Assembly: GCA_002269645.1 (NCBI GenBank)
Contig: NIVC01003660.1
Coordinates: 20,695 to 84,694, forward strand
Direction: 5' to 3'
Source of the DNA: Macrostomum lignano
Lineage: Eukaryota
Length of the DNA stretch: 64,000 bases
Shown one piece after another: positions 39,616-61,127 of this stretch. The notes beneath the pieces are model-generated. The model was not told the DNA's origin. It ran no database searches and worked only from the letters and a program-made list of their open reading frames with translations. Numbering within the stretch: position 1 is the stretch's first letter; every line of letters starts with the position of its first letter. The position numbers were made by a program, and so were the translations under genes.

Positions 39616-39969
39616 GAGGAACCCCAGCTTCAGGCCAGCGGCAGTAGCGAACCCGCTGTTCAGGCAGCTCAGGCCACAGAAAATGACACTGAAGAAGTGC
39701 AGCCTCGTCATCCTCAGCCTCAGCAGCCGCCGCCGCCGCAGCAGCAGCAGCAGCAGGTGCTGCCTCACAGCGATAGCCGAGTCGGCGAGGCGGACACGAT
39801 CTCCAAGCGAGATTATTACACACTGCGCGACCAGGGCGCCACTATGCAGCCGACACTGCAGAGGCAGTCAGAGGGAGGCGGCGGCGGCATTCGGCGCCTG
39901 GGTTCGGTGAAGATGCGCGAGTGTCTGGTTGTGATGCTGGACGGATCGGTTAATTCCTTTGAAGTTGAC
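39616..39969 (+). CDS. FERM-SPRY protein, exon with Gln/Pro-rich leader and start of FERM F1
   Basis: Acceptor catcccag|GAG, donor GAC|GTGAGC. Ends with KMRECLVVMLDGSVNSFEVD (band 4.1: MHCKVSLLDDTVYECVVE). Confidence 0.8.
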
Positions 39970-40127
39970 GTGAGCAATAAAATGCTTTTCTAATTATTCA
40001 GTATGCAGTTTTTTAGATTGCCTAATTTAACAAAAGAAGTTTCCCAGGAAATTGATCTATTTCCGTTTACCCAATATTTCATTGATGGATTTTTTCTTGC
40101 CCTCTTCTTCTTTCTATTCGATCGCAG

Positions 40128-40232
40128 CCGGCCTCCAAAGCGCAGGATTTGTTCGACGAGACCTGCAAGTTTCTCTGTCTGCGCGAGAAAGAATACTTCG
40201 GCCTGTGCTATCGGGACTCTACGCACATTTTT
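40128..40232 (+). CDS. FERM-SPRY protein, FERM F1 exon
   Basis: gatcgcag|PASKAQDLFDETCKFLCLREKEYFGLCYRDSTHIF|gtgagt (band 4.1: [26 protein letters not shown]). Confidence 0.88.
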
Positions 40233-40419
40233 GTGAGTTGGGCATTGCTTGTTAACTATATAATAGTACATTTGCTTTGCATCCTGCCGCACACTTTCTG
40301 GCGCCTCCCTCCGCTCCCTTTCTTTTAGAGGAAGGTATCTCCTTTATAGCCTTTCTTGGCGCCACCTTCCCATGCCTTAGCGCCTCCTTCTGCTCCCTTC
40401 CTGGTGCCCTATTAGTGTC

Positions 40420-40600
40420 CGTTTGACGCCCCTTCCACACCCATCCTGGCGCCGTCTTGTCTGTTTGGCGCCCCCTTCGATACCCACCCTGGCGCCCCCT
40501 TGGTGTCTTTTTGGCGCCCCCTTCCATACCCACTCTGGCAGCCCCTTGGTGTCTTTTTGGCGCCCCCTTCCATACCCACTCTGGCGCCCTCCTGCGCTCC
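40420..40600. repeat. Short GC-rich tandem repeat (GGCGCCCCCTT core)
   Basis: Recurrent TTGGTGTCTTTTTGGCGCCCCCTTCCATACCCACTCT. Confidence 0.7.
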
Positions 40601-41252
40601 CTCGGGTTTCCAAATCAATTTTTATTTCTCGTTTATGCAAAAGTACATAATCTCCCTCTATCTGAGCAAACGGACTGTAAAAAGGAAACGGACAGATCTG
40701 GCGGCACTTTCAATGCGATATTTTTGGGAGTTGGTTCTATAATAGATTGACGAGCGCCATTGGCGGGGAAGGAAAGAAGCAGAGAAACCCTCTCGCCACT
40801 GCCCTCTGGTCCCCCTCTTTTGAACTTTTTTCCATTCCCCTCTCTCTCCACCGTGATTGCCAATTAACGGGCAAACTCCCCCAAAACTCTGCCTCAAGCC
40901 GCCCAATCTCCCCTGATGAGGCCAACCCAGCTGCAGGTCACGTGACCCCTGACCGCATATATATATGCGGAAATATAAATATTTCCTGGCGTCAGTCTTT
41001 CTTCCTTTTTATTCGAGCATTTTTTAAGCCCAGCGCGAGTACGCTGACTTCCTGGTGGGATTTTTCTGGCCTAATAGAGGTGTGGGATAATTATATTGGC
41101 TGTCAGGTGGCGCGGGGCGGGGTCGAAAAAAATTTGAGTTGATGAGGAATATTATTAATCTGACCGGATATTGGTAGGTGGGATTCGCCCATTGTTTGCC
41201 GGGGGTTATTCATTGGCTCGCTGGGATGATTCCCAGGGCTTCAGATAGCGGG

Positions 41253-42730
41253 CACTGAGATTTACCACTCTGGGAAATTCCCCCATACACACTGAGATTT
41301 ACCACTCTGGGAAACTCCCCCATACACTGAGATTTACCGCTCTGGGAAATTCCCCCATAAACTGAGATTTACCGCTCTGGGAAACTCCCCCATACACTGA
41401 GATTTACCGCTCTGGGAAATTCCCCCATACACTGAGATTTACCGCTCTGGGAAACTCCCCCATAAACTGAGATTTACCGCTCTGGGAAATTCCCCCATAC
41501 ACTGAGATTTACCGCTCTGAGAAATTCCCCCCATACACTGAGATTTACCGCTCTGGGAAATTCCCCCCATACACTGAGATTTACCGCTCTAGAAAATTCC
41601 CTCACACACTGAGATTTACCACTCTGGGAAATTCCCCGATAAACTGAGATTTACCGCTCTGGGAAATTCCCCCACACACTGAGATTTACCACTCTGGGAA
41701 AATCCCCCATAAACTGAGATTTACCACTCTGGGAAATTCCCCCATACAAACTGAGATTTACCGCTCTGGGAAATTCCCCCATACACTGAGATTTACCACT
41801 CTGGGAAATTCCCCGATAAACTGAGATTTACCGCTCTGGGAAATTCCCCCATACACTGATATTTACCGCTCTGGGAAATTCCCCCATACACTGAGATTTA
41901 CCGCTCTGGGAAATCCCCCATAAACTGAGATTTACCACTCTGGGAAATTCCCCCATACACACTGAGATTTACCGCTCTGGGAAATTCCCCGATAAACTGA
42001 GATTTACCACTCTGGGAAATTCCCCCATACACTGAGATTTACCGCTCTGGGAAATTCCCCCATACACTGATATTTACCGCTCTGGGAAATTCCCCCATAC
42101 ACTGAGATTTACCGCTCTGGGAAATCCCCCATAAACTGAGATTTACCACTCTGGGAAATTCCCCCATACACACTGAGATTTACCGCTCTGGGAAATTCCC
42201 CGATAAACTGAGATTTACCACTCTGGGAAATTCCCCCATACACTGAGATTTACCGCTCTGGGAAATTCCCCCATACACTGAGATTTACCGCTCTGGGAAA
42301 TTCCCCCATACACTGATATTTACCGCTCTGGGAAATTCCCTCATACACTGAGATTTACCGCTCTGGGAAATTCCCCCATACACTGAGATTTACCGCTCTG
42401 GGAAATTCCCCCATACACTGATATTTACCGCTCTGGGAAATTCCCCCATACACTGAGATTTACCGCTCTGGGAAATTCCCCCATACACTGATATTTACCG
42501 CTCTGGGAAATTCCCTCATACACACTGAGATTTACCACTCTGGGAAATTCCCCGATAAACTGAGATTTACCGCTCTGAGAAATTCCCCAACACACTGAGG
42601 TTTATCAGTCTGGGAAATTCCCCCACACATGGAGATTCACCACTCTGGGAAATCCCCCCACGCTGAGGTTTGTAGATTTACAATGAGATTGTACACTGAG
42701 ATTTACAACTAAGAAATTCCCTCACACACT
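41253..42730. repeat. ~35-bp minisatellite CACTGAGATTTACCGCTCTGGGAAATTCCCCCATA
   Basis: About 40 tandem copies in the intron. Confidence 0.97.
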
Positions 42731-42888
42731 AGAGCATCTCCTGGTTGAGATTCGAGAATATTCCTATTAAGATTCGATCGTGAAGCATATCTTCTACAGG
42801 GTAAAATATTCAAAGATATACTGACGCTGTCGCACCCAATAAAATAATAATTTATTAAAAGCACTTCTTTTGCTTTTCCAATTTGCAG

Positions 42889-42931
42889 CACTGGCTCTAC
42901 AATGACAGACGGCTGAACAAGCAGATTGGCA
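42889..42931 (+). CDS. FERM-SPRY protein, 43-nt FERM exon
   Basis: tttgcag|HWLYNDRRLNKQIG|gtaagc (band 4.1: TWLDSAKEIKKQV). Ends in phase 1. Confidence 0.82.
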
Positions 42932-43404
42932 GTAAGCAGCTCGTCATTTTCTTCTTTTATTATTCAAAACCCATTTTTCTGTTTACGAATGCTTGCAAAA
43001 TTCCATTGGGACCCACGTGTGTCACCTGGGATTCAGTTTGGCGCATTTACGGCATCACCGTCAGGATCTTTCCTCTCCGCTGCTAGCATTTTTCCCCTTA
43101 ATTAGTCCCTGCCTTATCCTACATGACCTGTGTATACACAGTGTGCGGTCCATGCAGTGGTGGAGCGCACACCTGGCCTAGTTAGTGGATGCAGCCCTTC
43201 AGTTTAGTAGTTCCTTTATGGATATGGCGGTGCATGCATATTCCGCATCCATCACTTTCTAATGCCAAGTTAGACACGCGCACACAGGGCCACGTAATAC
43301 ATGGCTTATTTTGCTTGTGAGCATATGCATTTAGGATTATATAGTATTAGCGGATATTGACTTTTTGACTAATCCATATTCTTTCTATTATTAGCTAACT
43401 TAAT

Positions 43405-45355
<1,951 letters not shown>

Positions 45356-45809
45356 TCTACGAGCTACAAGACTCAAAAATTTATTGTAGCCGCGCATGGA
45401 ATCAAGGATTTTATAACCTCAACAACTGCAAATAGTAAATTTATTTACAGTGCGACATCGGTAGCAAAACTGGTGGCAAAGATTCTCACGCTATCTGAGT
45501 GACTGCACATGTAGAATAGCTTGTATAAGCATAGAAGAGGCCTGCTTTGCTGATCTTTAAGTGTTAGCTTTTCGGCACTGGTGTATGCAATCTGCAATTT
45601 GTACCCTCGCGCAGCCTCTCCGCCACTTGAATTTCGAACTGTGTGCTCCTAGGCCCACTGTAACTTGCACATATCTCTCATATCCTAGCGGCCCAGCCAG
45701 TTGCTATGCAGTTTCATGCTGAACACTATATTAATTTATGGGATGCAATGTACAAGTTGTCTGCCATCTCAAAGAGTTGAGCCCGACCAGTCTATTTTAG
45801 TCGTATTTT

Positions 45810-46745
45810 GAATGAATTATCGAGCTTGTGATGAATTATCGAGCTTGTGATGAATTATCGAGCTTGTGATGAATTATCGAGCTTGTGATGAATTATCGAG
45901 CTTGTGAGTTATCGAGCTTGTGAATTATCGAGCTTATGAATTATCGAGCTTGTGAATTATCAAGCTTGTGAATTATCGAGCTTGTGAATTATCGAGCTTG
46001 TGAATTATCGAGCTTGTGAATTATCGAGCTTGTGAATTATCGAGCTTGTGAATTATCGAGCTTGTGAATTATCGAGCTTGTGAATTATCGAGCTTGTGAA
46101 TTATCGAGCTTATGAATTATCGAGCTTGTGAGTTATCGAGCTTGTGAGTTATCGAGCTTGTGAATTATCGAGCTTGTGAATTATCGAGCTTGTGAATTAT
46201 CGAGCTTGTGAATTATCGAGCTTGTGAATTATCGAGCTTGTGAATTATCGAGCTTGTGAATTATCGAGCTTATGAATTATCGAGCTTGTGAGTTATCGAG
46301 CTTGTGAGTTATCGAGCTTGTGAATTATCGAGCTTGTGAATTATCGAGCTTGCGAATTATCAAGCTTATGAATTATCGAGCTTGTGAATTATCGAGCTTG
46401 TGAATTATCGAGCTTGTGAATTATCGAGCTTGTGAATTATCGAGCTTATGAATTATCGAGCTTGTGAGTTATCGAGCTTGCGATAAATTATCGAGCTTGT
46501 AAATTATCAAGCTTATGAATTATCGAGCTTGTGAATTATCGAGCTTGCGAATTATCAAGCTTATGAATTATCGAGCTTGTGATAAATTATCGAGCTTGTA
46601 AATTATCGAGCTTGTGAATTATCGAGCTTATGAATTATCGAGCTTGTGATAAATTATCGAGCTTGTAAATTATCAAGCTTATGAATTATCGAGCTTGTGA
46701 ATTAAGGAGCTTGTGAGTTATCGAGCTTGTGAATTATGGAGCTTG
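45810..46745. repeat. 16-bp minisatellite GAATTATCGAGCTTGT
   Basis: About 55 tandem copies. Confidence 0.97.
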
Positions 46746-47404
46746 TGAATTTTCGATGTCTTAAGTGTCAAGCTTATCGAAGTTCAGAGTCCAACAAAAG
46801 CAGGCACAATTCCAATAAAAAACCATAAACTTCAAAAAGTCGGAATTCGGTGCGGATGCGAAGCCATATTCCGGGAAACCTGCTGCAGCAGGTGATGGAG
46901 CTGTGGGAAGCTGGGCCCGCAGCGCATTACGCAAAAACATTTGGCAAGTATGGATAGGATTCGAAGCAGAATTTCGCCCCCACCCCCTGATTTTCTTCCC
47001 TCAGGGATATCCCTATCCGATTATTTCATTAGAAAAATCCTCTTGAGTGGGAGCGGGGCAAATTCTTGGCCTATTCTAAACCGCAATATTGTTGTTGCCA
47101 TGGTTACTAGGCTGGCGGCGGTAGGATCGAAAGCAGTAGTAGGTATAGGGGAATCGAATGCCTTCTTACCTGATATTTACTATACCCTTGGCAATGGGGT
47201 TTCAAGTTCAGCGATGACGCATCATCTGATCCTAATGCGATTTATGCCCAGGATTTGGGGAAATTTTATGTATTTTTCATCTCAATTGCTTAGTCTTCAC
47301 CTTTAGAGTTCAGGTGATGAATAATTGTTAGGTGCTTGTCAGAAATACTGTTGTACTTCTAAATATTGCGTTTGTGTGTCTATGATGGAGAATTGCGTGA
47401 TAAG

Positions 47405-49005
47405 CTTGTAAGCCCTATAAGATAATCGCCTATAAGCCCTATCTGGGAATCGCCTATAAGCCCTATCTGGGAATCGTCTATAAGCCCTATCTGGGAATCG
47501 CCTATAAGCCCTATCTGGGAATCGCCTATAAGCCCTATCTGGGAATCGCCTATAAGCCCTATCTGGGAATCGCCTATAAGCCCTATCTGGGAGTCATCTA
47601 TAAGCCCCATCTGGGAGTCGCCTATAAGCCCTATCTGGGAGTCGTCTATAAGCCCTATCTGGGAATCGTCTATAAGCCCTATCTGGGAGTCATCTATAAG
47701 CCCTATCTGGGAGTCGTCTATAAGCCCTATCTGGGAATCGTCTATAAGCCCTATCTGGGAGTCATCTATAAGCCCTATCTGGGAGTCGTCTATAAGCCCT
47801 ATCTGGGAATCGTCTATAAGCCCTATCTGGGAGTCATCTATAAGCCCTATCTGGGAGTCGTCTATAAGCCCTATCTGGGAGTCGTCTATAAGCCCTATCT
47901 GGGAATCGTCTATAAGCCCTATCTGGGAGTCGCCTATAAGCCCCATCTGGGAGTCGCCTATAAGCCCTATCTGGGAGTCGCCTATAAGCCCCATCTGGGA
48001 GTCGCCTATAAGCCCTATCTGGGAATCGTCTATAAGCCCTATCTGGAAATCGTCTATAAGCCCTATCTGGGAATCGTCTATAAGCCCTATCTGGGAATCG
48101 TCTATAAGCCCTATCTGGAAATCGTCTATAAGCCCTATCTGGGAATCGTCTATAAGCCCTATCTGGAAATCGTCTATAAGCCCTATCTGGGAATCGTCTA
48201 TAAGCCCTATCTGGGAATCGTCTATAAGCCCTATCTGGGAATCGTCTATAAGCCCTATCTGGGAATCGTCTATAAGCCCTATCTAGGAATCGTCTATAAG
48301 CCCTATCTGGGAGTCGTCTATAAGCCCTATCTGGGAGTCGTCTATAAGCCCTATCTGGGAGTCGTCTATAAGCCCTATCTGGGAGTCGTCTATAGGCACT
48401 ATCTGGGAGTCGTCTATAAGCCCTATCTGGTAATCGTCTATAAGCCCTATCTGGGAATCGTCTATAAGCCATATCTGGAAATCGCCTATAAGCCCTATCT
48501 GGGAATCGTCTATAAGCCCTATCTGGAAATCGCCTATAAGCCCTATCTGGTAATCGTCTATAAGCCCTATCTGGGAATCCTCTATAAGCCCTTTCTGGGA
48601 ATCGTCTATAAGCCCTATCTGGAAATCGTCTATAAGCCCTTTCTGGGAATCGTCTATAAGCCTTATCTGGAAATCGTCTATAAGCCCTATCTGGTAATCG
48701 TCTATAAGCCCTATCTGGTAATCGTCTATAAGCCCTATCTGGTAATCGTCTATAAGCCCTATCTGGTAATCGTCTATAAGCCCTATCTGGTAATCGTCTA
48801 TAAGCCCTATCTGAGAATCGTCTATAAGCCCTATCTGGTAATCGTCTATAAGCCCTATCTGGTAATCGTCTATAAGCCCTATCTGGTAATCGTCTATAAG
48901 CCCTATCTGGGAATCGTCTATAAGCCCCATCTGGAAATCGCCTATAAGCCCTACGAGTATCTTGGAATCGCCTATAAGCCCTATCTGAGAATCGTCTTTA
49001 AACCT
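47405..49005. repeat. 24-bp minisatellite TATAAGCCCTATCTGGGAATCGTC
   Basis: About 65 tandem copies, giving spurious SQIGLIDD and AYRRFPDR ORFs. Confidence 0.97.
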
Positions 49006-49122
49006 CACTAGAGAATCACTTGTAAACTTTACAGAAGCAGTAGTTGTACATGTCCATATATAGCCCTATTACTCATCGTTAACCATACTGATTCAAACGC
49101 CTGTCAACGCCCCATCGCTCAG

Positions 49123-49355
49123 AGAACGAATGGAAGCTGGAGTTCATGGTGAAATTCTATCCGCCAGATCCGGAGAATCTGCGCGACAATCTCACCCGGT
49201 ACTACATGGCGCTGCAGATTCGCCAGAATCTTATGGCCGACATTTTGCCCTGCTCGTTTACTACCTATATAGTGCTCGGCAGTTACGTTGTGCAGTCGGA
49301 GATTGGCGACTACGATCCGTCTGACCCGCGGTTTAACGATGTCACCTATCTGCAG
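49123..49355 (+). CDS. FERM-SPRY protein, FERM F1/F2 exon
   Basis: gctcag|AG. Encodes NEWKLEFMVKFYPPDPENLRDNLTRYYMALQIRQNLMADILPCSFTTYIVLGSYVVQSEIGDYDP. Donor CAG|GTGGGC. Confidence 0.95.
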
Positions 49356-49431
49356 GTGGGCTGAGCTGCTGACTGTTTGCTTTGGTCTGCTCTTTTACTG
49401 TGTAGTTTTTCTGAAATGTTGATAGAATCTG

Positions 49432-50635: not shown

Positions 50636-51499
50636 TTGGAAAGGAAATAAAAATTAAAAGATGATCTTAAGAGGGAAACAAATTTTGATTCTTTTTGCAA
50701 ACGATAATGAAGATAATAACGATTCTGCAATTGCTCTACGAGCTAGAAATACTATACTTTTTTAAAGCAAGCAGTTATACAAATCAAGTTGATATTGAGT
50801 ACTGAACTCAGCTTACGGGCATATGGTGATGCTTTCTATGCTTTTTCTTATATAAGAATACTTGAGCTGAGACTCGAAACAGACAAGAGAAAATTTAATT
50901 GACTTCATTAATCTTGATTAGTTATGATTGGTTGCCTGTGCCCGCCCGAGTAGGAGAGCCAGCAAGTCACGTGACTTTATTTCAGAGTACGATCTGCACT
51001 TTTATAGAAAATTTATAAGCACCTTTTTTATGGACTGTTGAGGGATGAATTGCAGATAAGAAAGTGACGAATGAGCAGCTCTGTTGTCATTTTAATTGCC
51101 TATAAACTGTAGGCTTGGATTTTTCAAGCTTAGATAATCCTCTCCAGATCAGGGCTGGTTGATGAGGGGAGCAGAGCAGCGGTGGATTCAGATCACCCAT
51201 GTCCGTCTCTGTCTGGCCATGTAAACCAGCTGCCGCCCGCCATCCACTGCTGCCTTGTCTGGCCTGGCAAGCAAGGGAAGAAAATCCCCCCCCTACAACT
51301 CTGGCCTTCTTATTCCTTTTTTGCTAAGCTTTATTCTATCTTATCTCGGCGTGTCCGAAGCCACTACGGACTTTAGCTGGGAATTTTTCAGCTTAATATT
51401 TGAGGAACTTTTTTTAAATGTCTAAGCTGGATTGTGCGAACATTTCGGAACTGAATGAATGCTTGGGCACTGGACACGCCGCCTGACACTTGGGAATGG

Positions 51500-52935: not shown

Positions 52936-53033
52936 AATACTCAAACAGCAGCAATATCAACAGCAAAAGTCCAACTGTTTAAGTCGGGCGGGATCAATGA
53001 GCAACCTTAAATCCTGCCCCACCCCACCGTCAG

Positions 53034-53455
53034 GACTGTCCATTCTGCCCGGAGGAGTTCCGCGCACACCGCGACCTCCAAGAGCGGGTGATTGATTTGC
53101 ACCGATCGCACAGCGGCATGACGCCCGAAGAGGCTGATCAGCATTTTCTGCAGAACGCCAAGAAGCTGGCAATGTACGGCGTTGACATGCACGAAGCTCG
53201 CGACAGTCGCGGAGATGAGATCTACGTCGGCGTGTACCACGGCGGCGTGCTGGTGTACCGCAACAGCTTGCGGATCAACCGGTTCTCCTGGCCGAAGATC
53301 ATGCGGGTGTCCTACAAGCGCAGCTCGCTGAGGATCGCCCTGCGACCGGCCGATTCCGACTGGCGCGGTGAACGGGTGGTGGAATTTCGATGCGCTTCGT
53401 CTAAACTGGCGAAGCGGCTGTGGCGGGCCGTGGTGGAGCATCACGGATTCTTCAG
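53034..53455 (+). CDS. FERM-SPRY protein, FERM F2/F3 exon
   Basis: ccgtcag|DCPF...MTPEEADQHFLQNAKKLAMYGVDMH...RINRFSWPKIMRVSYKRS...AKRLWRAVVEHHGFF; donor AG|GTGCGC. Confidence 0.95.
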
Positions 53456-53499
53456 GTGCGCCTGGTTTATTAGTGACAGCTCGGCAATCGACTGCCGGC

Positions 53500-53965
53500 T
53501 AGGTTAGGGTTTGGGTCTGGGTTTGGGTTTAGGTTTGGGTTAAGATTTGGTTTATGGTTGGGTTTAGGTTTGGGTTTAGGTTTGGGTTTAGGTTTGGGTT
53601 TAGGTTTGGGTTTAGATTTGGGTTTAGGTTTGGGTTTAGATTTGGGTTTAGGTTTGGGTTTAGGTTTGGGTTTAGGTTTGGGTTTAGGTTTTGGTTTAGA
53701 TTTTAGGTTTAGGTTGGGTTTAAGTTTTAGGTTTAGGCTTGTGTTTAAGTTTGGGTTTAGGTTTGGGTTTAAGTTTGGGTTTAGGTTTTAGGTTCAGGTT
53801 TGGGTTTAGTTTGGGTTTAGGTTTTAGGTTCAGGTTTGGGTTTAGTTTGGGTTTAGGTTTTAGGTTCAGGTTTGGGTTTAGTTTGGGTTTAGGTTTTAGG
53901 TTCAGGTTTGGGTTTAGTTTGGGTTTAGGTTTTAGGTTCAGGTTTGGGTTTAGGTAAGGGTTAGG
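53500..53965. repeat. Telomere-like (GGTTTA/GGTTTG)n tract
   Basis: Starts with GGTTAGGGTTTGGG and continues as AGGTTTGGGTTT units. Confidence 0.9.
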
Positions 53966-53989
53966 TCACGTAAAACATAAAAGTGTCAT

Positions 53990-54850
53990 ATCAAACACAA
54001 AAGAAGCCTCATATCAAACATAAAAGAAGCCTCATGTCAAACATAGAAGAAGCCTCATGTCAAACATAAAAGCCTCATGTCAAACATAGAAGAAGCCTCA
54101 TGTCAAACATAAAAGAAGCCTCATGTCAAACATAAAAGCCTCATGTCAAACATAGAAGAAGCCTCATGTCAAACATAGAAGAAGCCTCATGTCAAACATA
54201 AAAGAAGCCTCATGTCAAACATAGAAGAAGCCTCATGTCAAACATAAAAGAAGCCTCATGTCAAACATAGAAGAAGCCTCATGTCAAACATAAAAGCCTC
54301 ATGTCAAACATAGAAGAAGCCTCATGTCAAACATAAAAGAAGCCTCATGTCAAACATAAAAGAAGCCTCATATCAAACATAAAAGAAGCCTCATGTCAAA
54401 CATAGAAGAAGCCTCATGTCAAACATAAAAGCCTCATGTCAAACATAGAAGAAGCCTCATGTCAAACATAGAAGAAGCCTCATGTCAAACATAAAAGAAG
54501 CCTCATGTCAAACATAAAAGCCTCATGTCAAACATAGAAGAAGCCTCATGTCAAACATAGAAGAAGCCTCATGTCAAACATAGAAGAAGCCTCATGTCAA
54601 ACATAAAAGAAGCCTCATGTCAAACATAAAAGAAGCCTCATGTCAAACATAGAAGAAGCCTCATGTCAAACATAAAAGAAGCCTCATGTCAAACATAGAA
54701 GAAGCCTCATGTCAAACATAAAAGCCTCATGTCAAACATAGAAGAAGCCTCATGTCAAACATAAAAGAAGCCTCATGTCAAACATAAAAGCCTCATGTCA
54801 AACATAGAAGAAGCCTCATGTCAAACATAGAAGAAGCCTCATGTCAAACA
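53990..54850. repeat. 20-23-bp satellite AAGCCTCATGTCAAACATA(A/G)AAG, related to the reverse complement of the 7545-10520 family
   Basis: The reverse complement CTTCTATGTTTGACATGAGGCTT compares with CTTCTATGATTGTTTACATGACGCTT. Confidence 0.9.
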
Positions 54851-55215
54851 AAGGCGTCATTGCAAAAATTAAAGATTTATTGGGGAATCGCTGAAATGTT
54901 AAGGCTGAAGTCAGAAGCTAAATTTAGTTTATTCCTCCTAAACGGGGACGCTGATTGCTAGTTTCTAATAATAGCATTTGAATAAAACATAGACTTTTGA
55001 TAATGCTATATTTTTAATAAGTAGAGTTTAAGTAGTAGCTTCCTGATTGAGCATTGACTTTAAATAAGGATTTTTAACATGGAATTTAAGCATCAGGAGC
55101 GTGCACTTTTATTAATAGCATCTTGATTTAGCATAGATTTAGCCAGTATCAAATTTCGTATGTATAGCTGAATGTATAAACGCAGGCATCTACCACTCCG
55201 TACTATTTTTGGCAG

Positions 55216-55379
55216 GCTCAAGTCGCCAGAGAAGCCAGCTAAGCCGCTAATTCCGGGAACATTCAAACGCAATTGGAACTACACCGGGCCCACTAGGGGC
55301 CAGATGAATGACCAGACTCTGGGGCCGCTGCCCGAGGCACTCATCACTCCCGGGATGCGCAAGAGCTTTCGAAAGAAGG
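55216..55379 (+). CDS. FERM-SPRY protein, FERM-adjacent-like exon
   Basis: ttggcag|G. Encodes LKSPEKPAKPLIPGTFKRNWNYTGPTRGQM...SFRKK. Donor G|GTGAGT. Phases 2 and 1 match the neighbouring exons. Confidence 0.8.
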
Positions 55380-55380
55380 G

Positions 55381-55935
55381 TGAGTCTGTACTGAGCTGGT
55401 CAGAGTCTGTACTGAGTTGGTCAGAGTCTGTACTGAGCTAGTCAGAGTCTGTACTGAGTTGGTCAGAGTCTGTACTGAGCTAGTCAGAGTCTGTAATGAG
55501 TTGGTCAGAGTCTGTACTGAGCTAGTCAGAGTCTGTAATGAGCTAGTCAGAGTCTGTACTGAGCTGGTCAGAGTCTGTACTGAGCTGGTCAGAGTCTGTA
55601 CTGAGCTAGTCAGAGTCTGTACTGAGCTAGTCAGAGTCTGTACTGAGTTGGTCAGAGTCTGTACTGAGTTGGTCAGAGTCTGTACTGAGTTGGTCAGAGT
55701 CTGTACTGAGTTGGTCAGAGTCTGTACTGAGCTAGTCAGAGTCTGTACTGAGCTAGTCAGAGTCTGTACTGAGCTGGTCAGAATCTGTACTGAGGTGGTC
55801 AGAGTCTGTACTGAGTTGGTCAGAGTCTGTACTGAGCTAGTCAGAGTCTGTACTGAGCTAGTCAGAGTCTGTACTGAGTTGGTCAGAGTTTGTACTGAGC
55901 TAGTCAGAGTCTGTACTGAGCTAGTCAGAGTCTGT
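55381..55935. repeat. 21-bp minisatellite GAGTCTGTACTGAGCTAGTCA
   Basis: About 26 copies starting at the splice donor. Confidence 0.97.
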
Positions 55936-55969
55936 GTCAGGTCCGGCACCCCATTCCCGCACCGCTCAG

Positions 55970-56651
55970 AAGACGCATTCAGCACTTACGAGCCGCAGCT
56001 GGGCGGCCCCGGTCTCAACGGCACCGGCAGCGCGGCGGCCACGGCCTCCCGCTACTACCCGGCGCAGAGCACACCTCAGGACTATCAGCACCAGCAGCAC
56101 CAGCACTCCACTCTGCCAGCTCGAGAACAGTTCGATCGCCGCATCGAACTGGAGTCGGTCAGGCCGCGCCGGTGGTGCCTAACGCCGCTGGACGCCGACG
56201 TTGACGGCGCCGGCGCCTCGGTGGCGATCGCCGACCAAACAGTCGATGGCGACGAGACTCGCCGACCGCCGCTGCTGACCGCCGCCTGTCCGGGCGGCGA
56301 CTGGCTCGGCGTTCGGGCCGACTCCGGCGTCAGATACGGCGGCCAGTGGTACTTCGAGGTCGTTGTCGACGTGCCCGACGGTGCCAACCGGGACGCCGAC
56401 GTCGATGCTCGCATCGGCTGGGCGACGGCGTCGGCTGGACTTCGGCTCGGAGCCGCCGACGGACACGGATTCGGGTTTGGGGCCGGGCCGGACGGCCGAC
56501 AGGCCACCAAGTGCTTGGCCGGCCAGGTTGAAGACTACGGCTGCCGCCTGCGGCCGGGCGACGTTGTCGGAGCCGCTCTGGACCTGGACAGCGGCCTGGC
56601 GCTGTTCTCTGTGAATGGCGCCGAGCAGGGCCAGGCTTACAGCCTGAATAG
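55970..56651 (+). CDS. FERM-SPRY protein, linker plus SPRY domain 1
   Basis: Acceptor ccgctcag|AA (phase 1). Encodes DWLGVRADSGVRYGGQWYFEV...ARIGWAT...LGAADGHGFGFG...YGCRLRPGDVVGAALDLDSGLALFSVNG. Donor AG|GTGAGT. Confidence 0.85.
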
Positions 56652-56669
56652 GTGAGTTCCGCACTGCTC

Positions 56670-57960
56670 ATCTATATGCCTGCTTATCTACCCGCCTGCT
56701 TATCTACCTTCCTGCTTATCTACCCGCCTGCTTATCTACCTTCCTGCTTATCTACCCGCCTGCTCATCTACCTGCCTGCTTATCTACCTGCCTGCGTATC
56801 TACCCGCCTGCTTATCTACCTGCCTGCTTATCTACCCGCCTGCTTATCTACCTGCTTATCTACCCGCCTGCTTATCTACCTGCTTATCTACCCGCCTGCT
56901 TATCTACCCGCCTGCTTATCTACCCTCCTGCTTATCTACCTGCTTATCTACCCGCCTGCTTATCTACCTGCTTATCTACCTATCTGCTTATCTACCTGAC
57001 TGCTTATCTAACTGCCTGCTTATCTACCCGCCTGCTTATCTACCCGCCTGCTTATCTACCCGCCTGCTTATCTACCTGCCTGCTTATCTACCCGCCTGCT
57101 TATCTACCTGCCTGCTTATCTACCCGCCTTCTTATCTACCTGCTTATCTCTCCGCCTGCTTATCTACCTGCTTATCTACCCGCCTGCTTATCTACCTGCT
57201 TATCTACCTATCTGCTTATCTACCTGCCTGCTTATCTACCTTCCTGCTTATCTATCCGCCTGCTTATCTACCTGCTTATCTACCCGCCTGCTTATCTACC
57301 TGTCTGCTTATCTACCTGTCTGCTTATCTACCTGTCTGCTTATCTACCCGCCTGCTTATCTACCTGCTTATCTACCCGCCTGCTTATCTACCTTCCTGCT
57401 TATCTACCCGCCTGCTTATCTACCTTTCTGCTTATCTACCCGCCTGCTTATCTACCTGCTTATCTACCCTGTTTTCTACTTGCCTGCTTATCTACCTGCC
57501 TGCCTATCTACTCGCCTGCTTATCTACCTGCCTGCTTATCTACCTGCCTGCTTATCTACCCGCCTGCTTATCTACTCGCCTGCTTATCTACCTGCCTGCT
57601 TATCTACCTGCCTGCTTATCTACCCGCCTGCTTATCTACCCGCCTGCTTATCTACCTGCTTATCTACCCTGTTTTCTACTTGCCTGCTTATCTACCTGCC
57701 TGCCTATCTACTCGCCTGCTTATCTACTCGCCTGCTTATCTACCTGCTTATCTACCCTGTTTTCTACTTGCCTGCTTATCTACCTGCCTGCCTATCTACT
57801 CGCCTGCTTATCTACTCGCCTGCTTATCTACCTGCTTATCTACCCTGTTTTCTACTTGCCTGCTTATCTACCTGCCTGCCTATCTACTCGCCTGCTTATC
57901 TACCCGCCTGCTTATCTACTCGCCTGCTCATCTATCTGCCTGCTTATCTACTCGCCTGCT
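56670..57960. repeat. 13-17-bp minisatellite CTGCTTATCTACC(CGC/TGC)
   Basis: Tandem copies in the intron. Confidence 0.96.
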
Positions 57961-58489
57961 TACGTGTCCTTATTTATTTACCTGCTAGTCTAGCTAATGA
58001 CACTTTCTATGACCCCAGCGCACCAACTATATTATAATAAGCGGGGCAATAAATTTTAATAATCCTATTATGAATTGGTGTTTGCATTTTGAATCGCTGC
58101 TCTGACCTAATAAAAATTTATTGCCAGAGTTTGTATAAATTGGAGCCCAAAAAGACAACAGAAACAATAATAATGATATGCCTTTCAGATCAAAGCGACA
58201 GGAAGTGCATGCCCGGCAGTGCAGTATGATTTATGCATATGCAGTTTCTATAGTTTTTGCAGTTTTTTTCAATAAAATAACGGCTTTTCTGTCTGGCTTT
58301 AACTATTTATAGGATGCTTATAATTATTCTTTGTCTGGCCTAATATAGTCGATCGAGTATTGATATAACGGGACTGAAATTTGCCAAGTAGCTAATAAAC
58401 TGTTTGTTTAACAATTGTTGATAAAGTGCTCTGTCAGCCCTGCTGTACAGTTTCAGCGGTGTTTGTGTTGAATAGATGGCTAGGGGAGA

Positions 58490-58915
58490 TTTTTATTAGA
58501 TTGAGGTGAGATGCGGTGAGATTGAGTGATTTTATACGAGATAGGGTGAGATAAGAGCGACATTTGTGAGATAGGGTAAGATTGGGGTGAGATTGGATGA
58601 TATTGAGATGAGATACGTGAAATGGGGTGAGATAGTATGAGACTGATGTGAGATAAGATAAGTCTGGGGTGACATAAGATGAGATTGGTGTGAAATAGGA
58701 TGAGATTGGTGTGAGATAGGATGAGATTGGTGTGAGATAGGATGAGATTGGTGTGAGATAGGATGAGATTAGTGTGAGATAGGATGAGATTAATGTGAGA
58801 TAGGATGAGATTGATGTGAGATAAGATAAGATTGGTGCGAGAAATGAAGATGAGATTGAGTGAGATAGCATAAGATTAGGGTGAGATGGAGTTTTAAAAC
58901 TTGATGAGATTTTAT
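58490..58915. repeat. Degenerate GA-rich repeat (GAGATAGGATGAGATTGGTGT)
   Basis: Direct reading. Confidence 0.8.
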
Positions 58916-59037
58916 GGAGACACGATAATAATTGGATGGATTTTGAGTAAGAGCGGATGGATAGTATTATGAGGAGATCAGAATTGACGGACTAAGCAAG
59001 CTACACGTGTACACCTGCAACCCCCGCCCACCTGCAG

Positions 59038-59362
59038 GGATCTCCGCGCCGAGACCTTCTTCCCGGCCGGCTGCGCTAGAAACGGCGCCAATCTTCGCTG
59101 GAACTTCGGCGACGATCCGGCGCAGCCGCTGCGCCACCTGCCCGGCGGCCCGTGGCGCCCGGCCGGCCTGGCGCCCGTTAACCAACGCACCGATAATCCG
59201 CGCGCCTGGCGCCTAAATCATCACGACGTAACTGGCCCGGGCCTGGCGCTTGGCCCTGACGGAGCTTCGGCGCAGGGCCGTCTCGGCTTCGGCTGGCAGG
59301 GCGTCCGCGCCGCCAAAGGCGTCCGAGCGGTGGCCGGCGGGCCTGGCCGCTTCTATTACGAG
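59038..59362 (+). CDS. FERM-SPRY protein, end of SPRY1 and start of SPRY2
   Basis: cctgcag|G. Encodes DLRAETFFPAGCARNGANLRWNFGD...AWRLNHHD...ALGPDGASAQGRLGFGWQGVRAAKGV...GRFYYE. Donor GAG|GTTCGT. This frame was not called in the ORF track because it lacks a start codon. Confidence 0.85.
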
Positions 59363-59444
59363 GTTCGTACATGTTTGTGTGCATTTTCTGTCTCAAAACT
59401 GTGCCGTTAGAGAGGCCTAGAGTAGGATAAATAAATCTGAGTAG

Positions 59445-60525
59445 GGTAGATAGCCTCACAGTAGGTTAGATAGGCCCACAGTAGGGTAGATAGGCTCACA
59501 GTAGGTTAGATAGGCTCACAGTAGGTTAGATAGGCTCACAGTAGGTTAGATAGGCTCACAGTAGGTTAGATAGGCTCCCAGTAAGGTAGATAGGCTCAGA
59601 GTAGAGTAGATAGGCTCCGAGTAGAGTAGATAGGCTCCGAGTAGGGTAGCTAGGCTCCGAGTAGAGTAGCTAGGCTCCGAGTAGGGTAGATGGCTCCGAG
59701 TAGAGTAGATAGGCTCCGAGTAGAGTAGATAGGCTCCGAGTAGAGTAGATAGGCTCCGAGTAGGGTAGATTGTTCCGAGTAGAGTAGCTAGACTCCGAGT
59801 AGGGTAGATGGCTCCGAGTAGAGTAGATAGGCTCGGAGTAGGGTAGCTAGGCTCCGAATAGGGTAGATGGCTCCGAGTAGAGTAGATAGGCTCCGAGTAG
59901 AGTAGATAGGCTCCGAGTAGGGTAGATAGGCTCCGAGTAGAGTAGATAGGCTCAGAGTAGGGTAGATAGGCTCCGAGTAGAGTAGCTAGGCTCCGAGTAG
60001 AGTAGCTAGGCTCCGAGTAGAGTAGCTAGGCTCCGAGTAGAGTAGATAGGCTCCGAGTAGAGTAGATGGCTCCGAGTAGAGTAGATAGGCTCCGAGTAGA
60101 GTAGATAGGCTCCGAGTAGAGTAGATAGGCTCCGAGTAGAGTAGCTAGGCTCCGAGTAGAGTAGATAGGCTCCGAGTAGAGTAGATAGGCTCCGAGTAGG
60201 GTAGATAGGCTCCGAGTAGGGTAGATAGGCTCCGAGTAGAGTAGATAGGCTCCGAGTAGAGTAGATAGGCTCCGAGTAGGGTAGATAGGCTCCGAGTAGG
60301 GTAGATAGGCTCCGAGTAGGGTAGATAGGCTCCGAGTAGGGTAGATAGGCTCCGAGTAGGGTAGATAGGCTCCGAGTAGAGTAGATAGGCTCCGAGTAGA
60401 GTAGATAGGCTCCGAGTAGGGTAGATAGGCTCCGAGTAGGGTAGATAGGCTCCGAGTAGAGTAGATAGGCTCCGAGTAGGGTAGATAGGCTCCGAGTAGG
60501 GTAGATAGGCTCCGAGTAGAGTAGA
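59445..60525. repeat. 20-bp minisatellite AGGCTCCGAGTAGAGTAGAT
   Basis: About 54 copies. Confidence 0.97.
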
Positions 60526-60554
60526 TTAATTGATTTTGACCGCTCCAACTCCAG

Positions 60555-61019
60555 GCGGAGCCGCTGGAGTCGCAGCCGGCCGCCCTCGCCCGAGTCGGCT
60601 GGGCCACCGAGTCGGGCAGCTTGGACGCCGGCCGGGACAGCCAGGGCTGGGCGTACGGCGCGGATCCGGACGGCTTCGGTCTGGCCGGCAGCCAGGGCAA
60701 GAAGATGCACAGCGATCAGATTGACGTGTACGGTGAGCCGTACAGCGGAGGCGACGTGATCGGCTGCTACCTGGACTTCGGCGCCGGGGCGATCGCGTTC
60801 GCCAAGAACGGCAAATCGTTTGGCCAGGCCTATGCCCTGCCGCCTGCCGCCCGCGGCGACTCCACCACTTATTATCCCGTGGTGTGCCTCCGCGACCAGA
60901 CTGTGGACGTGAATTTCGGACAGCGGCCGTTTCGGCATCCGCCCGGGCCGGGTTGGACTCCGGTGGGCCTGGCCGGGGACGAGTCTGTCCGGCGGAGCGC
61001 CAGAACTGGCGTTGCCGAT
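60555..61019 (+). CDS. FERM-SPRY protein, SPRY domain 2; gene probably continues beyond the LINE
   Basis: actccag|AEPL...ARVGWAT...QGKKMHSDQIDVYGEPYSGGDVIGCYLDFGAGAIAFAKNGKSFGQAY...YPVVCLRDQTVDVNFGQRPFRHPPGPGW. Donor GAT|GTGAGC. Confidence 0.9.
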
Positions 61020-61127
61020 GTGAGCTGGCCGGGTTTTGTGTGTTTAATTGCTCTAATTTGTGTTTACTGTCTATTATGTGTTTCTTCGCATGATGTGTGT
61101 TTCTCCCTATGTGATTGTGGTTCTTCC

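What the first reader, a model, noticed from the sequence alone, without database searches (positions are those of the whole stretch)
39616..61019. FERM (band 4.1) fused to two tandem DDX1-type SPRY domains
Nine exons (354, 105, 43, 233, 422, 164, 682, 325, 465 nt) join with canonical GT-AG sites and consistent phase into a 931-codon stop-free frame. It contains a full band-4.1/EPB41-type FERM domain, a diverged FERM-adjacent segment, a low-complexity linker and two SPRY domains. SPRY2 tracks the DDX1 SPRY subtype closely (W.LN..D...AlG.DG..aQ.R...WqGvRA.KG; YYE; RVGW; GKK.H....D.YGE.....DVIGCYLD; KNG...G.A; NFG...F..PP). Classical 4.1 proteins instead carry spectrin-actin-binding and CTD regions after the FERM domain. 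I know of no described FERM-SPRY-SPRY protein. It could be a membrane/cytoskeleton adaptor built by capture and duplication of a DDX1-like SPRY module (inference).
Basis: partly seen in the sequence, partly recalled or inferred. Interest (0 to 1): 0.8.

Follow-up and report, generated by a model that had tools for sequence, protein, structure and literature searches.

The report
Flatworm protein 4.1 with two SPRY domains
This is a real gene of the flatworm Macrostomum lignano: a band-4.1-type membrane-anchoring (FERM) protein carrying two copies of a protein-binding module otherwise typical of the RNA helicase DDX1. The same undescribed architecture occurs in flukes, tapeworms and monogeneans, so it is a conserved flatworm gene family and not a one-off.

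Summary
All nine exons (39616-61019, + strand) have AG|..|GT borders and join into 931 stop-free codons. Pfam finds FERM_N, FERM_M, FERM_C and two SPRY domains. The FERM is closest to EPB41L3 (1.7e-92). Both SPRYs are closest to the DDX1 SPRY.

The window is Macrostomum lignano. The model is cut at both ends:
- A near-identical database protein continues for 228 residues after exon 9, on exons beyond the window.
- Exon 1 starts in phase 0 without an ATG.

The architecture is not unique. An exhaustive profile search found FERM-SPRY-SPRY proteins in trematodes, cestodes, a monogenean and three Macrostomum paralogs. Among the 150 best hits only flatworm proteins had a FERM. Several are misnamed "DDX1, partial". 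Intron-free RNA-like contigs encode the whole fusion in a relative. A paralog shares the intron at the FERM-to-SPRY join.

The SPRY tree is congruent for both copies, so the duplication predates the flatworm radiation. The tail may be a remnant of the 4.1 C-terminal domain (hhalign 55-64%). If so, the SPRY pair was inserted and did not replace it.

I found no paper on this architecture. The likely function, a membrane-cortex adaptor, is inferred.

The parts
39616..39969 (+). Exon 1 (354 nt, phase 0 at both ends). Encodes a Q/P-rich N-terminus, the conserved SKRDYYTLRD motif and the start of FERM_N. It has no ATG of its own at the 5' end.
   Evidence: Acceptor tcccag| and donor |gtgagc. It aligns with the N-termini of P0001 and P0004. 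P0005 starts at the same residue.
40128..40232 (+). Exon 2 (105 nt), FERM_N (KAQDLFDETCKFLCLREKEYFGLCYRD).
   Evidence: The intron position is shared with paralog locus L003.
42889..42931 (+). Exon 3 (43 nt), end of FERM_N (HWLYNDRRLNKQIG).
   Evidence: It is one of 5 AG..GT candidates and was chosen by homology to P0001 and P0004. P0001 has the equivalent 43-nt exon.
49123..49355 (+). Exon 4 (233 nt), FERM_M.
   Evidence: The intron after it is absent in paralog P0001.
53034..53455 (+). Exon 5 (422 nt), FERM_M and FERM_C.
55216..55379 (+). Exon 6 (164 nt), the FERM-adjacent-like segment (FFR|LKSPEKPAKPLIPGTFKRNWNYTGPTRGQ ... MRKSFRKK).
   Evidence: It is colinear with P0001 and both of its borders are shared with L003. 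The Pfam FA model gives no hit.
55970..56651 (+). Exon 7 (682 nt), low-complexity linker plus most of SPRY1.
   Evidence: The junction KK|EDAF matches QK-EDAY in P0001.
59038..59362 (+). Exon 8 (325 nt), the end of SPRY1, the conserved inter-SPRY segment (NFGDDP..PL...PGG.WRP.GLAP) and the start of SPRY2.
60555..61019 (+). Exon 9 (465 nt), the rest of SPRY2. It ends at a used donor (GVAD|gtgagc), and the coding sequence continues beyond the window.
   Evidence: P0002 and P0001 continue with RKSKGF.Y.DP after this point. The tail exons are absent from 61020-64000.

Best explanation
The locus is a functional Macrostomum lignano gene of a family found across flatworms. Its N-terminal half is a protein-4.1/coracle-type FERM domain with a degenerate FERM-adjacent segment. 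Then come a disordered linker, two tandem SPRY domains that both descend from the SPRY module of the DEAD-box helicase DDX1, and, on exons beyond the window, a tail of about 230 residues whose last block may be a remnant of the 4.1 C-terminal domain.

Shown here: the exon structure, the domain content, the DDX1 affinity of both SPRYs, conservation of the architecture in Macrostomorpha, Trematoda, Cestoda and Monogenea, and a SPRY duplication older than the split of those groups.

Inferred: a copy of the self-contained DDX1 SPRY module was inserted into the variable central region of the ancestral flatworm 4.1 gene and then duplicated in tandem. Flatworm DDX1 keeps its own SPRY, so this was a copy and not a transfer.

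Inferred mechanism: the FERM domain docks the protein on cytoplasmic tails of membrane proteins and on phosphoinositides at the cell cortex or at septate junctions, as 4.1 and Coracle do. The rigid SPRY1-SPRY2 unit offers two protein-binding surfaces that recruit partners there. It sits where vertebrate 4.1 proteins carry the spectrin-actin-binding region.
For: - Exons, phases and splice sites.
- Pfam FERM_N/M/C plus 2 SPRY.
- FERM against PDB: EPB41L3 314 bits; the next family, FARP1, 187 bits.
- SPRY1 and SPRY2 each hit the DDX1 SPRY best (61 and 118 bits; next is RyR at 39 and 46).
- AF2 model: pLDDT 84.8, pTM 0.74, all-beta. The top PDB fold match is 4xw3 (TM 0.93, rmsd 1.5 A).
- Organism and paralogs P0001 and P0004 (FERM+SPRY, 55-60% identical over 97-100% of the query).
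- Exhaustive HMMER search of 1.84 billion representatives with the SPRY-pair profile. The best non-Macrostomum hits come from Echinostoma, Paragonimus, Dicrocoelium, Clonorchis, Mesocestoides (two), Schistocephalus and Cichlidogyrus (two); nearly all carry FERM plus 2 SPRY.
- Only flatworm proteins among the 150 best hits contain a FERM.
- A second profile search adds Schistosoma japonicum, S. curassoni and Heterobilharzia. Scores then drop from 311 to 194 bits, below which the listed hits are DDX1-type proteins of many phyla, including S. japonicum DDX1 with its SPRY.
- Two 3.5-kb Logan contigs from two runs carry an uninterrupted 1088-codon ORF for FERM-SPRY-SPRY-tail (P0003, 80% identical to M. 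lignano P0004). A 3,975-nt contig encodes the 1,105-aa Dicrocoelium-type protein.
- Colinear alignment across every exon junction.
- The introns at the FA-to-linker join and after SPRY2 are shared with paralog locus L003.
- SPRY tree: S1+S2 clade 70%, S2 clade 93%, with S1 and S2 subtrees congruent.
- Exons 7-9 total 1472 nt, which is not a multiple of 3, so the SPRY block cannot be skipped in frame.
Against: - There is no RNA evidence from this exact locus. The junctions are supported only by homology and by transcript-like contigs of relatives.
- Both ends of the gene are unresolved in the window.
- Homology of the tail to the 4.1 CTD is weak. hhalign gives 55-64% probability. hmmsearch gives 8.3 bits against 6.0 for the best of 300 shuffles. 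Pfam 4_1_CTD gives no hit.
- The Pfam FA model does not hit.
- S1+S2 monophyly has only 70% NJ bootstrap support and the DDX1 clade itself is unresolved.
- Intron positions in the SPRY exons do not match those of Lottia DDX1, so the mode of capture is open.
- I could not test whether flatworms also keep a classical 4.1 without SPRY.
- No functional data exist. The adaptor role is extrapolated from the 4.1/Coracle and SPRY families.
Confidence: 0.75

Rival explanations
1. Gene-model artefact. A truncated 4.1-like FERM gene and a separate downstream SPRY-SPRY gene lie head to tail and were joined only on paper.
For: There is no transcript from this locus in hand. One database model of the same gene (P0002) contains only the SPRY part and the tail, and another (P0005) contains mainly the FERM part.
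Against: - No stop or terminal exon follows exon 6, and the phases fit.
- The junction residues are conserved in P0001 and the intron position is shared.
- Intron-free contigs encode the complete fusion in a relative.
- The same order is kept in at least 8 other flatworm genera.
- P0005 and P0006 themselves run from FERM into SPRY1.
Confidence: 0.03
2. The window copy is a decaying duplicate (pseudogene or redundant homeolog) in the polyploid M. lignano genome, without a function of its own.
For: M. lignano carries several paralogs (P0001, P0004) and near-identical copies (P0002, P0005). The window copy has an unusual 14-residue insertion in SPRY1 and Ala/Gly-rich substitutions.
Against: - All nine exons are open, with intact canonical splice sites.
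- The residues invariant across the family are kept.
- A copy that differs at 1 of 470 residues is annotated independently.
- GC3 of 0.77 contrasts with the introns.
Confidence: 0.05
3. The SPRY pair does not come from a single DDX1 capture plus duplication. Either there were two independent acquisitions, or a pre-formed tandem SPRY module came from another protein.
For: - S1+S2 monophyly has only 70% support.
- The SPRY2 profile scores higher on DDX1 (120-138 bits) than on SPRY1 (82-93 bits).
- Multi-SPRY proteins with similar spacing exist in protists and metagenomes.
Against: - Both SPRYs have DDX1 as their best PDB match by a wide margin.
- Below the flatworm family, the listed hits are DDX1-type proteins.
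- The multi-SPRY hits are non-metazoan or unnamed and score below the flatworm family.
- The S1 and S2 subtrees mirror each other.
- P0001 has introns at the homologous WQ|G position in both SPRYs, although CAG|G is also a favoured site for intron gain.
Confidence: 0.1
4. The protein is not primarily a membrane-cortex adaptor. Its SPRY pair keeps a DDX1-like role and ties it to RNA-processing or nuclear partners, as some 4.1R isoforms act in the nucleus.
For: - The SPRYs retain 35-41% identity to DDX1 SPRY, including its flanks.
- Cestode tails give weak, sub-threshold hits to the eIF3g N-terminal model (E about 0.002).
- 4.1R is known to have nuclear partners (own knowledge).
Against: - The FERM is a conserved 4.1-type domain at 48% identity to EPB41L3. 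Its established role is membrane attachment.
- The eIF3g hits are below the curated cut-off.
- No RNA-binding or helicase domain is present.
Confidence: 0.12

Closest known systems
Protein 4.1 family (EPB41, EPB41L1-3; Drosophila Coracle)
   Same: - The three-lobed FERM domain is of the 4.1 subtype: 48% identity and 314 bits to EPB41L3, far above FARP, PTPN or ERM.
- It has the 43-nt exon encoding WL...K.I.KQ.
- After FERM comes an FFRL..P..P.K...G.F...Y.G.T..Q segment that resembles the FA region.
- A long variable centre precedes a short conserved C-terminal block.
   Different: - There are no SAB and no Pfam-detectable FA or CTD.
- Two SPRY domains occupy the central region.
- The C-terminal block matches the CTD only at 55-64% hhalign probability.
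SPRY domain of the DEAD-box helicase DDX1 (PDB 4xw3)
   Same: - It is the best sequence match for both SPRYs and the best fold match for the model (TM 0.93, rmsd 1.5 A, 35% identity).
- The DDX1-specific N-terminal extension (W.LN..D...L...PDG...Q....W.G.R) and C-terminal flank (NFG..PF..PP..G) are shared.
   Different: - There is no helicase core: DEAD and Helicase_C are absent.
- The module is duplicated in tandem and embedded in a FERM protein.
- SPRY1 is much more diverged than SPRY2.
Other FERM proteins with a lineage- or family-specific effector module after the FERM (FARP1/2, PTPN3/4, MYLIP/IDOL)
   Same: The logic is the same: a 4.1-like FERM anchor followed by a different functional module. 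All appear as weaker FERM matches.
   Different: Their modules are catalytic or signalling (RhoGEF-PH, PDZ-phosphatase, RING). Here the module is a pair of SPRY interaction domains. The FERM here is much closer to true 4.1 than theirs is (314 against 109-187 bits).
Ryanodine receptor SPRY1-3 and ASH2L SPRY
   Same: They share the SPRY beta-sandwich fold and are the next-best PDB matches. RyR also carries several SPRYs in one chain.
   Different: The scores are much lower (39-46 bits against 61-118 for DDX1), the domain context differs, and they lack the shared DDX1-type flanks.

Membership tests
Protein 4.1 / Coracle family | N-terminal three-lobed FERM domain of the 4.1 subtype | tested here: met
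   Pfam FERM_N, FERM_M and FERM_C are all above their cut-offs. The best PDB matches are EPB41L3 (1.7e-92) and EPB41 (2.3e-83), against FARP1 at 5e-54.
Protein 4.1 / Coracle family | FERM-adjacent (FA) regulatory region directly after FERM | tested here: inconclusive
   Pfam FA (PF08736) gives no hit for the window protein or for P0001, P0003 or P0004. By eye the segment FFRLKSPEKPAKPLIPGTFKRNWNYTGPTRGQ keeps the FFRL..P..P.K / Y.G.T..Q spacing, and neodermatan members have RKYHY.
Protein 4.1 / Coracle family | Spectrin-actin-binding (SAB) domain | tested here: not met
   PF04382 gives no hit. SAB is regarded as a vertebrate addition (own knowledge), so its absence does not exclude orthology with invertebrate 4.1/Coracle.
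Protein 4.1 / Coracle family | Conserved C-terminal domain (CTD, PF05902) | tested here: inconclusive
   The tail lies outside the window and was tested on P0001-P0004 and on neodermatan members.
- Pfam gives no hit.
- hhalign of flatworm tails against classical CTDs gives 64% / E 6.7e-5 and 55% / E 1.2e-4, over 39-44 columns at the extreme C-terminus.
- hmmsearch gives at most 8.3 bits, against 6.0 in 300 shuffles.
SPRY domain superfamily (PF00622) | SPRY beta-sandwich, scoring above the Pfam gathering threshold | tested here: met
   Two stretches total 114.8 bits against a cut-off of 26.3. The AF2 model is all-beta with pLDDT 84.8. Fold matches to SPRY structures have probability 1.00.
B30.2 (PRY-SPRY, TRIM/butyrophilin type) | PRY subdomain preceding SPRY | tested here: not met
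   No PRY family appears among the Pfam hits. The N-terminal extension is of the DDX1 type.
DDX1 (DEAD-box helicase 1), the name some databases give to relatives | DEAD and Helicase_C core with the SPRY inserted in RecA domain 1 | tested here: not met
   No DEAD or Helicase_C hit occurs in the window protein or in any flatworm FERM-SPRY member. True DDX1 proteins show PF00270+PF00622+PF00271.
Flatworm FERM-SPRY-SPRY family (unnamed; defined here) | Colinear order: 4.1-type FERM, FA-like segment, linker, SPRY1, conserved inter-SPRY segment, SPRY2 | tested here: met
   There is a full-length colinear alignment with P0001, P0004 and Echinostoma P0133. Pfam gives the same architecture for P0133, P0135, P0137 and P0138, and partial versions for P0136 and P0139-P0141. 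The SPRY-pair profile scores 311-837 bits within the family, against 194 bits or less for DDX1.
Flatworm FERM-SPRY-SPRY family (unnamed; defined here) | C-terminal tail with the RK.KG(F/W).Y.(D/E)P motif after SPRY2 and a terminal D..LN.AI...T block | not testable with these tools
   The exons for the tail lie beyond the 3' end of the window. The tail is present in P0002, which matches the window at 469 of 470 residues.

The most novel reading that the evidence does not exclude
In the flatworm stem lineage the single protein 4.1/Coracle orthologue took up a copy of the DDX1 SPRY module between its FERM/FA head and its C-terminal domain, and then duplicated it. On this reading every flatworm, including schistosomes, liver flukes and tapeworms, builds its 4.1-based membrane skeleton or septate-junction scaffold around a double-SPRY recruitment platform that no other animal phylum has. 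That would be a phylum-defining rewiring of a core cortical adaptor, and a parasite protein architecture absent from the hosts.
Probability: 0.3. Interest if true: 0.6.

Novelty: new variant of a known kind. Interest (0 to 1): 0.45.

Why it matters
Protein 4.1/Coracle proteins are core organisers of the membrane skeleton and of septate junctions. A whole phylum appears to run a version whose central region is a double SPRY interaction module copied from an RNA helicase. That is a clean, datable case of domain capture followed by tandem duplication. It gives flatworm cell biology a candidate lineage-specific cortical scaffold that can be tested by RNAi and in situ hybridisation in Macrostomum, planarians and schistosomes. 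The family includes proteins of major human and veterinary parasites, has no host counterpart with this architecture, and is currently misannotated in places as 'DDX1'. It is not a new kind of molecular system, and lineage-specific domain shuffling onto FERM proteins is common, so the surprise is moderate.

Tried and rejected
1. First word-indexed search with the Macrostomum SPRY-pair profile. It returned only 15 hits and none of the neodermatan relatives. The exhaustive HMMER search replaced it.
2. P0123, named 'SH2 domain-containing', looked like a second context for the SPRY pair. Its sequence is a frameshifted model of the P0001 locus, so I rejected it. P0205 ('SH3 domain-containing', 199 aa) is likewise a fragment.
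3. Multi-SPRY proteins with similar domain spacing (P0143, P0146, P0152, P0183, P0187, P0209, P0230) were checked as possible donors of a pre-formed tandem. They come from protists or metagenomes, or are unnamed, and carry other domains. Rejected as donors.
4. Pfam on the tails. There is no 4_1_CTD hit. Weak eIF3g N-terminal hits (E about 0.002, below cut-off) appear on two cestode tails and are not relied on. A classical-CTD HMM against the tails is barely above shuffles.
5. Search of the window for the tail exons and for the 5' start. No tail exons lie in 61020-64000. The window holds no copy of the M. lignano spliced leader. There is no ATG|GTRAG exon end in 33000-39616, and no similarity to the 5' exon of the paralog.
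6. Intron positions as a test of DNA-level capture. The Lottia DDX1 SPRY exons (L004) share no intron position with the window gene or with P0001, so this is inconclusive. The Exaiptasia DDX1 locus was not on record.
7. Literature. No paper in the held library combines FERM and SPRY with Macrostomum, Platyhelminthes, Schistosoma, planarian, flatworm or tapeworm, or combines FERM domain, SPRY domain and DDX1.

Full report
**1. The observation**

Exons of exactly those lengths, bounded by AG and GT, exist on the + strand:
- 39616-39969
- 40128-40232
- 42889-42931
- 49123-49355
- 53034-53455
- 55216-55379
- 55970-56651
- 59038-59362
- 60555-61019

Together they give 2793 nt, or 931 codons, with no stop. 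Every acceptor has a pyrimidine-rich tract, and the donors are mostly GTGAG or GTAAG.

Splice and no-stop rules alone leave two exons ambiguous: exon 2 has 3 candidates and the 43-nt exon has 5. Homology settles both. The 43-nt exon encodes HWLYNDRRLNKQIG, against YWLNGEKKLGKQIG in a paralog.

Exons are 51-72% GC with GC3 of 0.77, while introns are 32-51% GC.

Pfam finds FERM_N, FERM_M, FERM_C and two SPRY stretches, all far above the curated cut-offs. Against PDB sequences the FERM is closest to EPB41L3 (1.7e-92) and EPB41 (2.3e-83). The next FERM family, FARP1, is at 5e-54. The C-terminal SPRY is closest to the human DDX1 SPRY, 4xw3.

**2. Whose gene it is, and where the model falls short**

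The best database matches are all from the free-living flatworm Macrostomum lignano.
- P0002 (698 aa, named 'B30.2/SPRY domain-containing') matches the window model at 469 of 470 overlapping residues. It then continues RKSKGFAYADPRMLQESL... for 228 further residues.
- tblastn finds none of that tail in 61020-64000. The donor at 61019 is therefore real, and the gene runs off the 3' end of the window. The stretch after exon 9 instead holds an antisense reverse-transcriptase/RNase H (LINE-like) ORF.

At the 5' end, exon 1 begins in phase 0 straight after an acceptor and has an in-frame stop just upstream. Yet the sequence before its first internal ATG (EADTISKRDYYTLRDQG) is conserved in the paralogs. 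The start codon must therefore come from upstream.
- In paralog P0001 the first coding exon ends exactly in ...aaaATG|gtaagc, and the next exon follows 5 kb downstream in phase 0.
- The M. lignano spliced leader also ends in ATG, and about 30% of its genes are trans-spliced (PMC8629364).
- I could not decide between these two sources. No ATG|GTRAG site lies in the 6.6 kb upstream, and no leader copy is in the window.

**3. Is the FERM-to-SPRY join real?**

No RNA from this locus was available. Four independent lines support the join.
- The window protein aligns colinearly across all eight internal junctions with paralogs P0001 (60% identical) and P0004 (55%). At the key join, SFRKK|EDAF aligns with SFRQK-EDAY. 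P0004 has a 13-residue insertion exactly there, as expected at an exon border.
- In the genomic locus of P0001 (L003, assembly GCA_002269645.1), introns sit at the same positions after exons 1, 2, 3, 5 and 6 and after SPRY2. The introns inside the FERM_M and SPRY regions differ.
- P0003 (1088 aa, 80% identical to P0004) is encoded as one uninterrupted ORF, with its own 5' UTR and ATG, on 3.5-kb Logan contigs from two sequencing runs. That is what an assembled mRNA looks like for a gene whose genomic relatives have 9-12 introns. A 3,975-nt contig likewise encodes a 1,105-aa Dicrocoelium-type member.
- Exons 7-9 total 1472 nt, which is not a multiple of three. The SPRY block therefore cannot be skipped in frame to give a classical 4.1 isoform.

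**4. Distribution**

I searched 1.84 billion representative proteins exhaustively with a profile of the SPRY1-SPRY2 region (HMMER). Besides Macrostomum, a tight group scored 233-367 bits. Pfam shows FERM_N/M/C plus two SPRYs in the complete models and partial versions in the truncated ones.

Exact look-up names their sources:
- Trematodes: Echinostoma caproni, Paragonimus kellicotti, Dicrocoelium dendriticum, Clonorchis sinensis.
- Cestodes: Mesocestoides corti (two genes), Schistocephalus solidus.
- Monogenean: Cichlidogyrus casuarinus (two genes).

Two of these are named 'ATP-dependent RNA helicase DDX1, partial' or 'DEAD box helicase 1, partial'. A local phmmer of the window FERM against all listed hits found a FERM only in the flatworm proteins.

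A second profile search, built from neodermatan SPRY pairs, added Schistosoma japonicum (again named 'DDX1'), S. curassoni and Heterobilharzia americana. Scores then fall from 311 to 194 bits. Below that gap the listed hits are DDX1-type proteins (DEAD plus SPRY, most with Helicase_C) from many phyla, including the S. japonicum DDX1 itself.

The architecture is therefore conserved from Macrostomorpha to Neodermata, and I did not see it outside flatworms. A limit applies here. Only the best 150 and 120 hits were listed, so more diverged FERM+SPRY proteins elsewhere cannot be excluded.

**5. Origin of the SPRY pair**

Taken alone, SPRY1 hits the DDX1 SPRY at 61 bits (next is RyR at 39). SPRY2 hits it at 118 bits (next is RyR at 46). 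The SPRY2 alignment runs through the DDX1-specific N-terminal extension and C-terminal flank.

An AlphaFold2 model of the pair has mean pLDDT 84.8 and pTM 0.74 and is all-beta. Its best PDB fold match is 4xw3 (TM 0.93 on the target, rmsd 1.5 A, 35% identity).

I built a neighbour-joining tree of 20 flatworm SPRYs, 24 DDX1 SPRYs and 2 outgroups (194 columns, 100 bootstraps).
- It joins all SPRY1 and SPRY2 sequences in one clade (70%) beside DDX1.
- SPRY2 is monophyletic (93%), and so are the neodermatan SPRY1 sequences (100%).
- The SPRY1 and SPRY2 subtrees mirror each other. Each has a Macrostomum clade, a group A (Echinostoma, Mesocestoides-A, Cichlidogyrus-A) and a group B (Dicrocoelium, Schistocephalus, Mesocestoides-B, Cichlidogyrus-B).

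This is the pattern expected if one DDX1-type SPRY was captured and duplicated before the flatworm radiation, with the whole gene duplicating later in Neodermata and separately in Macrostomum. The support is moderate and the DDX1 clade itself is unresolved.

Paralog P0001 has introns at the homologous WQ|G position of both SPRYs. This fits a DNA-level tandem duplication, but CAG|G is also a favoured site for intron gain. None of the SPRY introns coincide with those of Lottia DDX1. How the module was captured therefore remains open.

**6. The tail**

All full-length members continue after SPRY2. Macrostomum and neodermatan group A share RK.KG(F/W).Y.(D/E)P directly after SPRY2. Most members then have a (D/E)P..(V/I)..Y..E.G..V.(K/R).(I/V) block. 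Near the very C-terminus they have (D/E).D..LN.AI...T.L....V.

The last block resembles the end of the classical 4.1 C-terminal domain. Compare [38 protein letters not shown] with Macrostomum ETRTGRRNLQLVLSEEGGEEDDLLNDIIYQQTGLS and S. japonicum DDFDEDLSMALLTVTKLDPDISV.

The statistics are weak:
- hhalign gives 64% and 55% probability (E 6.7e-5 and 1.2e-4) over 39-44 columns.
- A CTD HMM reaches only 8.3 bits, against 6.0 for the best of 300 shuffles.
- Pfam 4_1_CTD does not hit.

I treat CTD homology as possible but unproven. If it is real, the SPRY pair was inserted into the variable centre of a 4.1 protein and did not replace its C-terminus.

**7. What it most likely does**

*Shown:* a 4.1-subtype FERM, two intact SPRY folds and family-wide conservation of both.

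*Inferred from established knowledge of the families:* 4.1 and Coracle FERM domains bind cytoplasmic tails of membrane proteins and phosphoinositides, and they organise the membrane skeleton and septate junctions. SPRY domains are protein-protein interaction modules. The most likely mechanism is therefore a cortical adaptor. The FERM anchors the protein at the membrane, and the SPRY1-SPRY2 unit recruits partners. This unit occupies the position where vertebrate 4.1 proteins carry the spectrin-actin-binding region.

*Alternatives:* a nuclear or RNA-linked role inherited from DDX1, a non-functional duplicate, or a chimeric model. These are listed with their tests, and the last two are unlikely on the evidence above.

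**8. Comparison with what is known, and novelty**

The protein passes the FERM criterion of the 4.1 family. It fails SAB and is inconclusive for FA and CTD. It is a SPRY-domain protein of the DDX1 subtype, but it is not a DDX1 because it has no helicase core.

FERM proteins with family-specific modules after the FERM are well known (FARP, PTPN3/4, MYLIP). A FERM followed by two SPRYs is not among the described ones, as far as the held literature shows. Four full-text searches found no paper.

The proteins themselves are already in public databases, unnamed or misnamed. I rate the finding as a new variant of a known kind. It is real, conserved across a phylum and undescribed. It is also the product of an ordinary evolutionary process and has no functional data yet.

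**9. Verdict**

| Item | Result |
|---|---|
| Observation | Confirmed |
| Interpretation | Partly supported: architecture and DDX1 affinity are right; 'instead of CTD' and 'no such protein' need amending |
| Interest | 0.45 |

Noticed in passing
window 40400-61488 (introns 2-9 of the gene): Every intron except the 158-nt intron 1 carries one to three distinct tandem arrays, each with its own unit:
- 46-nt x4 and 35-nt x40 in intron 2
- (TTAG)x489 (nearly 2 kb), 16-nt x58 and 24-nt x66 in intron 3
- 32/159-nt x38 and 24-nt x60 in intron 4
- 12-nt x38 and 23-nt x38 in intron 5
- 21-nt x26 in intron 6
- 16-nt x86 and 21-nt x15 in intron 7
- 20-nt x55 in intron 8
- 20-nt x19 after exon 9
The arrays make up most of the intronic DNA.
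   Followed up: partly
window 55380-55969 (intron 6): The 590-nt intron at the FERM-to-SPRY join is almost entirely a 21-nt minisatellite that starts 2 nt after the donor. It is open in the reading frame of exon 7 (VCTELVR repeats). In the frame of exon 6 it hits a stop after about 20 codons, so retaining the intron would truncate the protein.
   Followed up: partly
window 39616; L003 10001-10003 and 15121: Exon 1 of the window gene and the second coding exon of paralog P0001 both start in phase 0 right after an acceptor. In P0001 the upstream exon ends exactly with ATG|gtaagc. The M. lignano spliced leader also ends in ATG (PMC8629364). The start codon of the window gene may therefore be supplied by an ATG-terminal 5' exon or by trans-splicing.
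   Followed up: partly
window 61636-63998, minus strand: Reverse-transcriptase (RVT_1) and RNase H ORFs of a non-LTR-type retroelement lie antisense in the intron after exon 9. The element runs to the end of the window.
   Followed up: partly
window 25-2119, minus strand: These are exons of a Mind-bomb-like E3 ligase gene: two MIB_HERC2 domains, a ZZ zinc finger and a Mind bomb SH3 repeat.
   Followed up: partly
window 13636-14409, plus strand: An ORF matches the 2',3'-cyclic-nucleotide 3'-phosphodiesterase (CNPase) family at E 1.3e-27. I did not examine its gene structure or relatives.
   Followed up: no
window 15019-15477 and 31877-32971, minus strand; 20407-22572, plus strand: There is a THAP-domain ORF (2.9e-12), a 365-aa F-box ORF, and a 722-aa open frame with no Pfam hit that runs through a (CAGA)n-type repeat.
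   Followed up: no
related proteins P0136 (Clonorchis GAA30691.2), P0138 (Cichlidogyrus KAL3319268.1), P0296 (Schistosoma japonicum): Public records name these FERM-SPRY-SPRY proteins 'ATP-dependent RNA helicase DDX1' or 'DEAD box helicase 1, partial', although they have no helicase domain. Several M. lignano UniProt models of this family (P0005, P0006, P0122, P0123) are frameshifted.
   Followed up: yes
L003 about 25736 and 26957 (paralog P0001): P0001 has phase-0 introns at the homologous position of both SPRY domains (DWQ|GCR and GWQ|GVR). The window gene has neither. It has introns at YSLNR|DLRAE and FYYE|AEP instead, plus one in FERM_M (TYLQ|DCPF) that P0001 lacks. Intron turnover between paralogs is therefore high.
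   Followed up: partly
tails of P0284 (Schistocephalus) and P0285 (Mesocestoides): The block GDP.V.V.YY.NE.GQ.VKRIIQ.H gives sub-threshold Pfam hits to the N-terminal region of eIF3g (E 0.0015-0.002, 19 bits against a cut-off of 24.4). A similar hairpin-like motif occurs in classical 4.1 CTDs. The significance is unknown.
   Followed up: no
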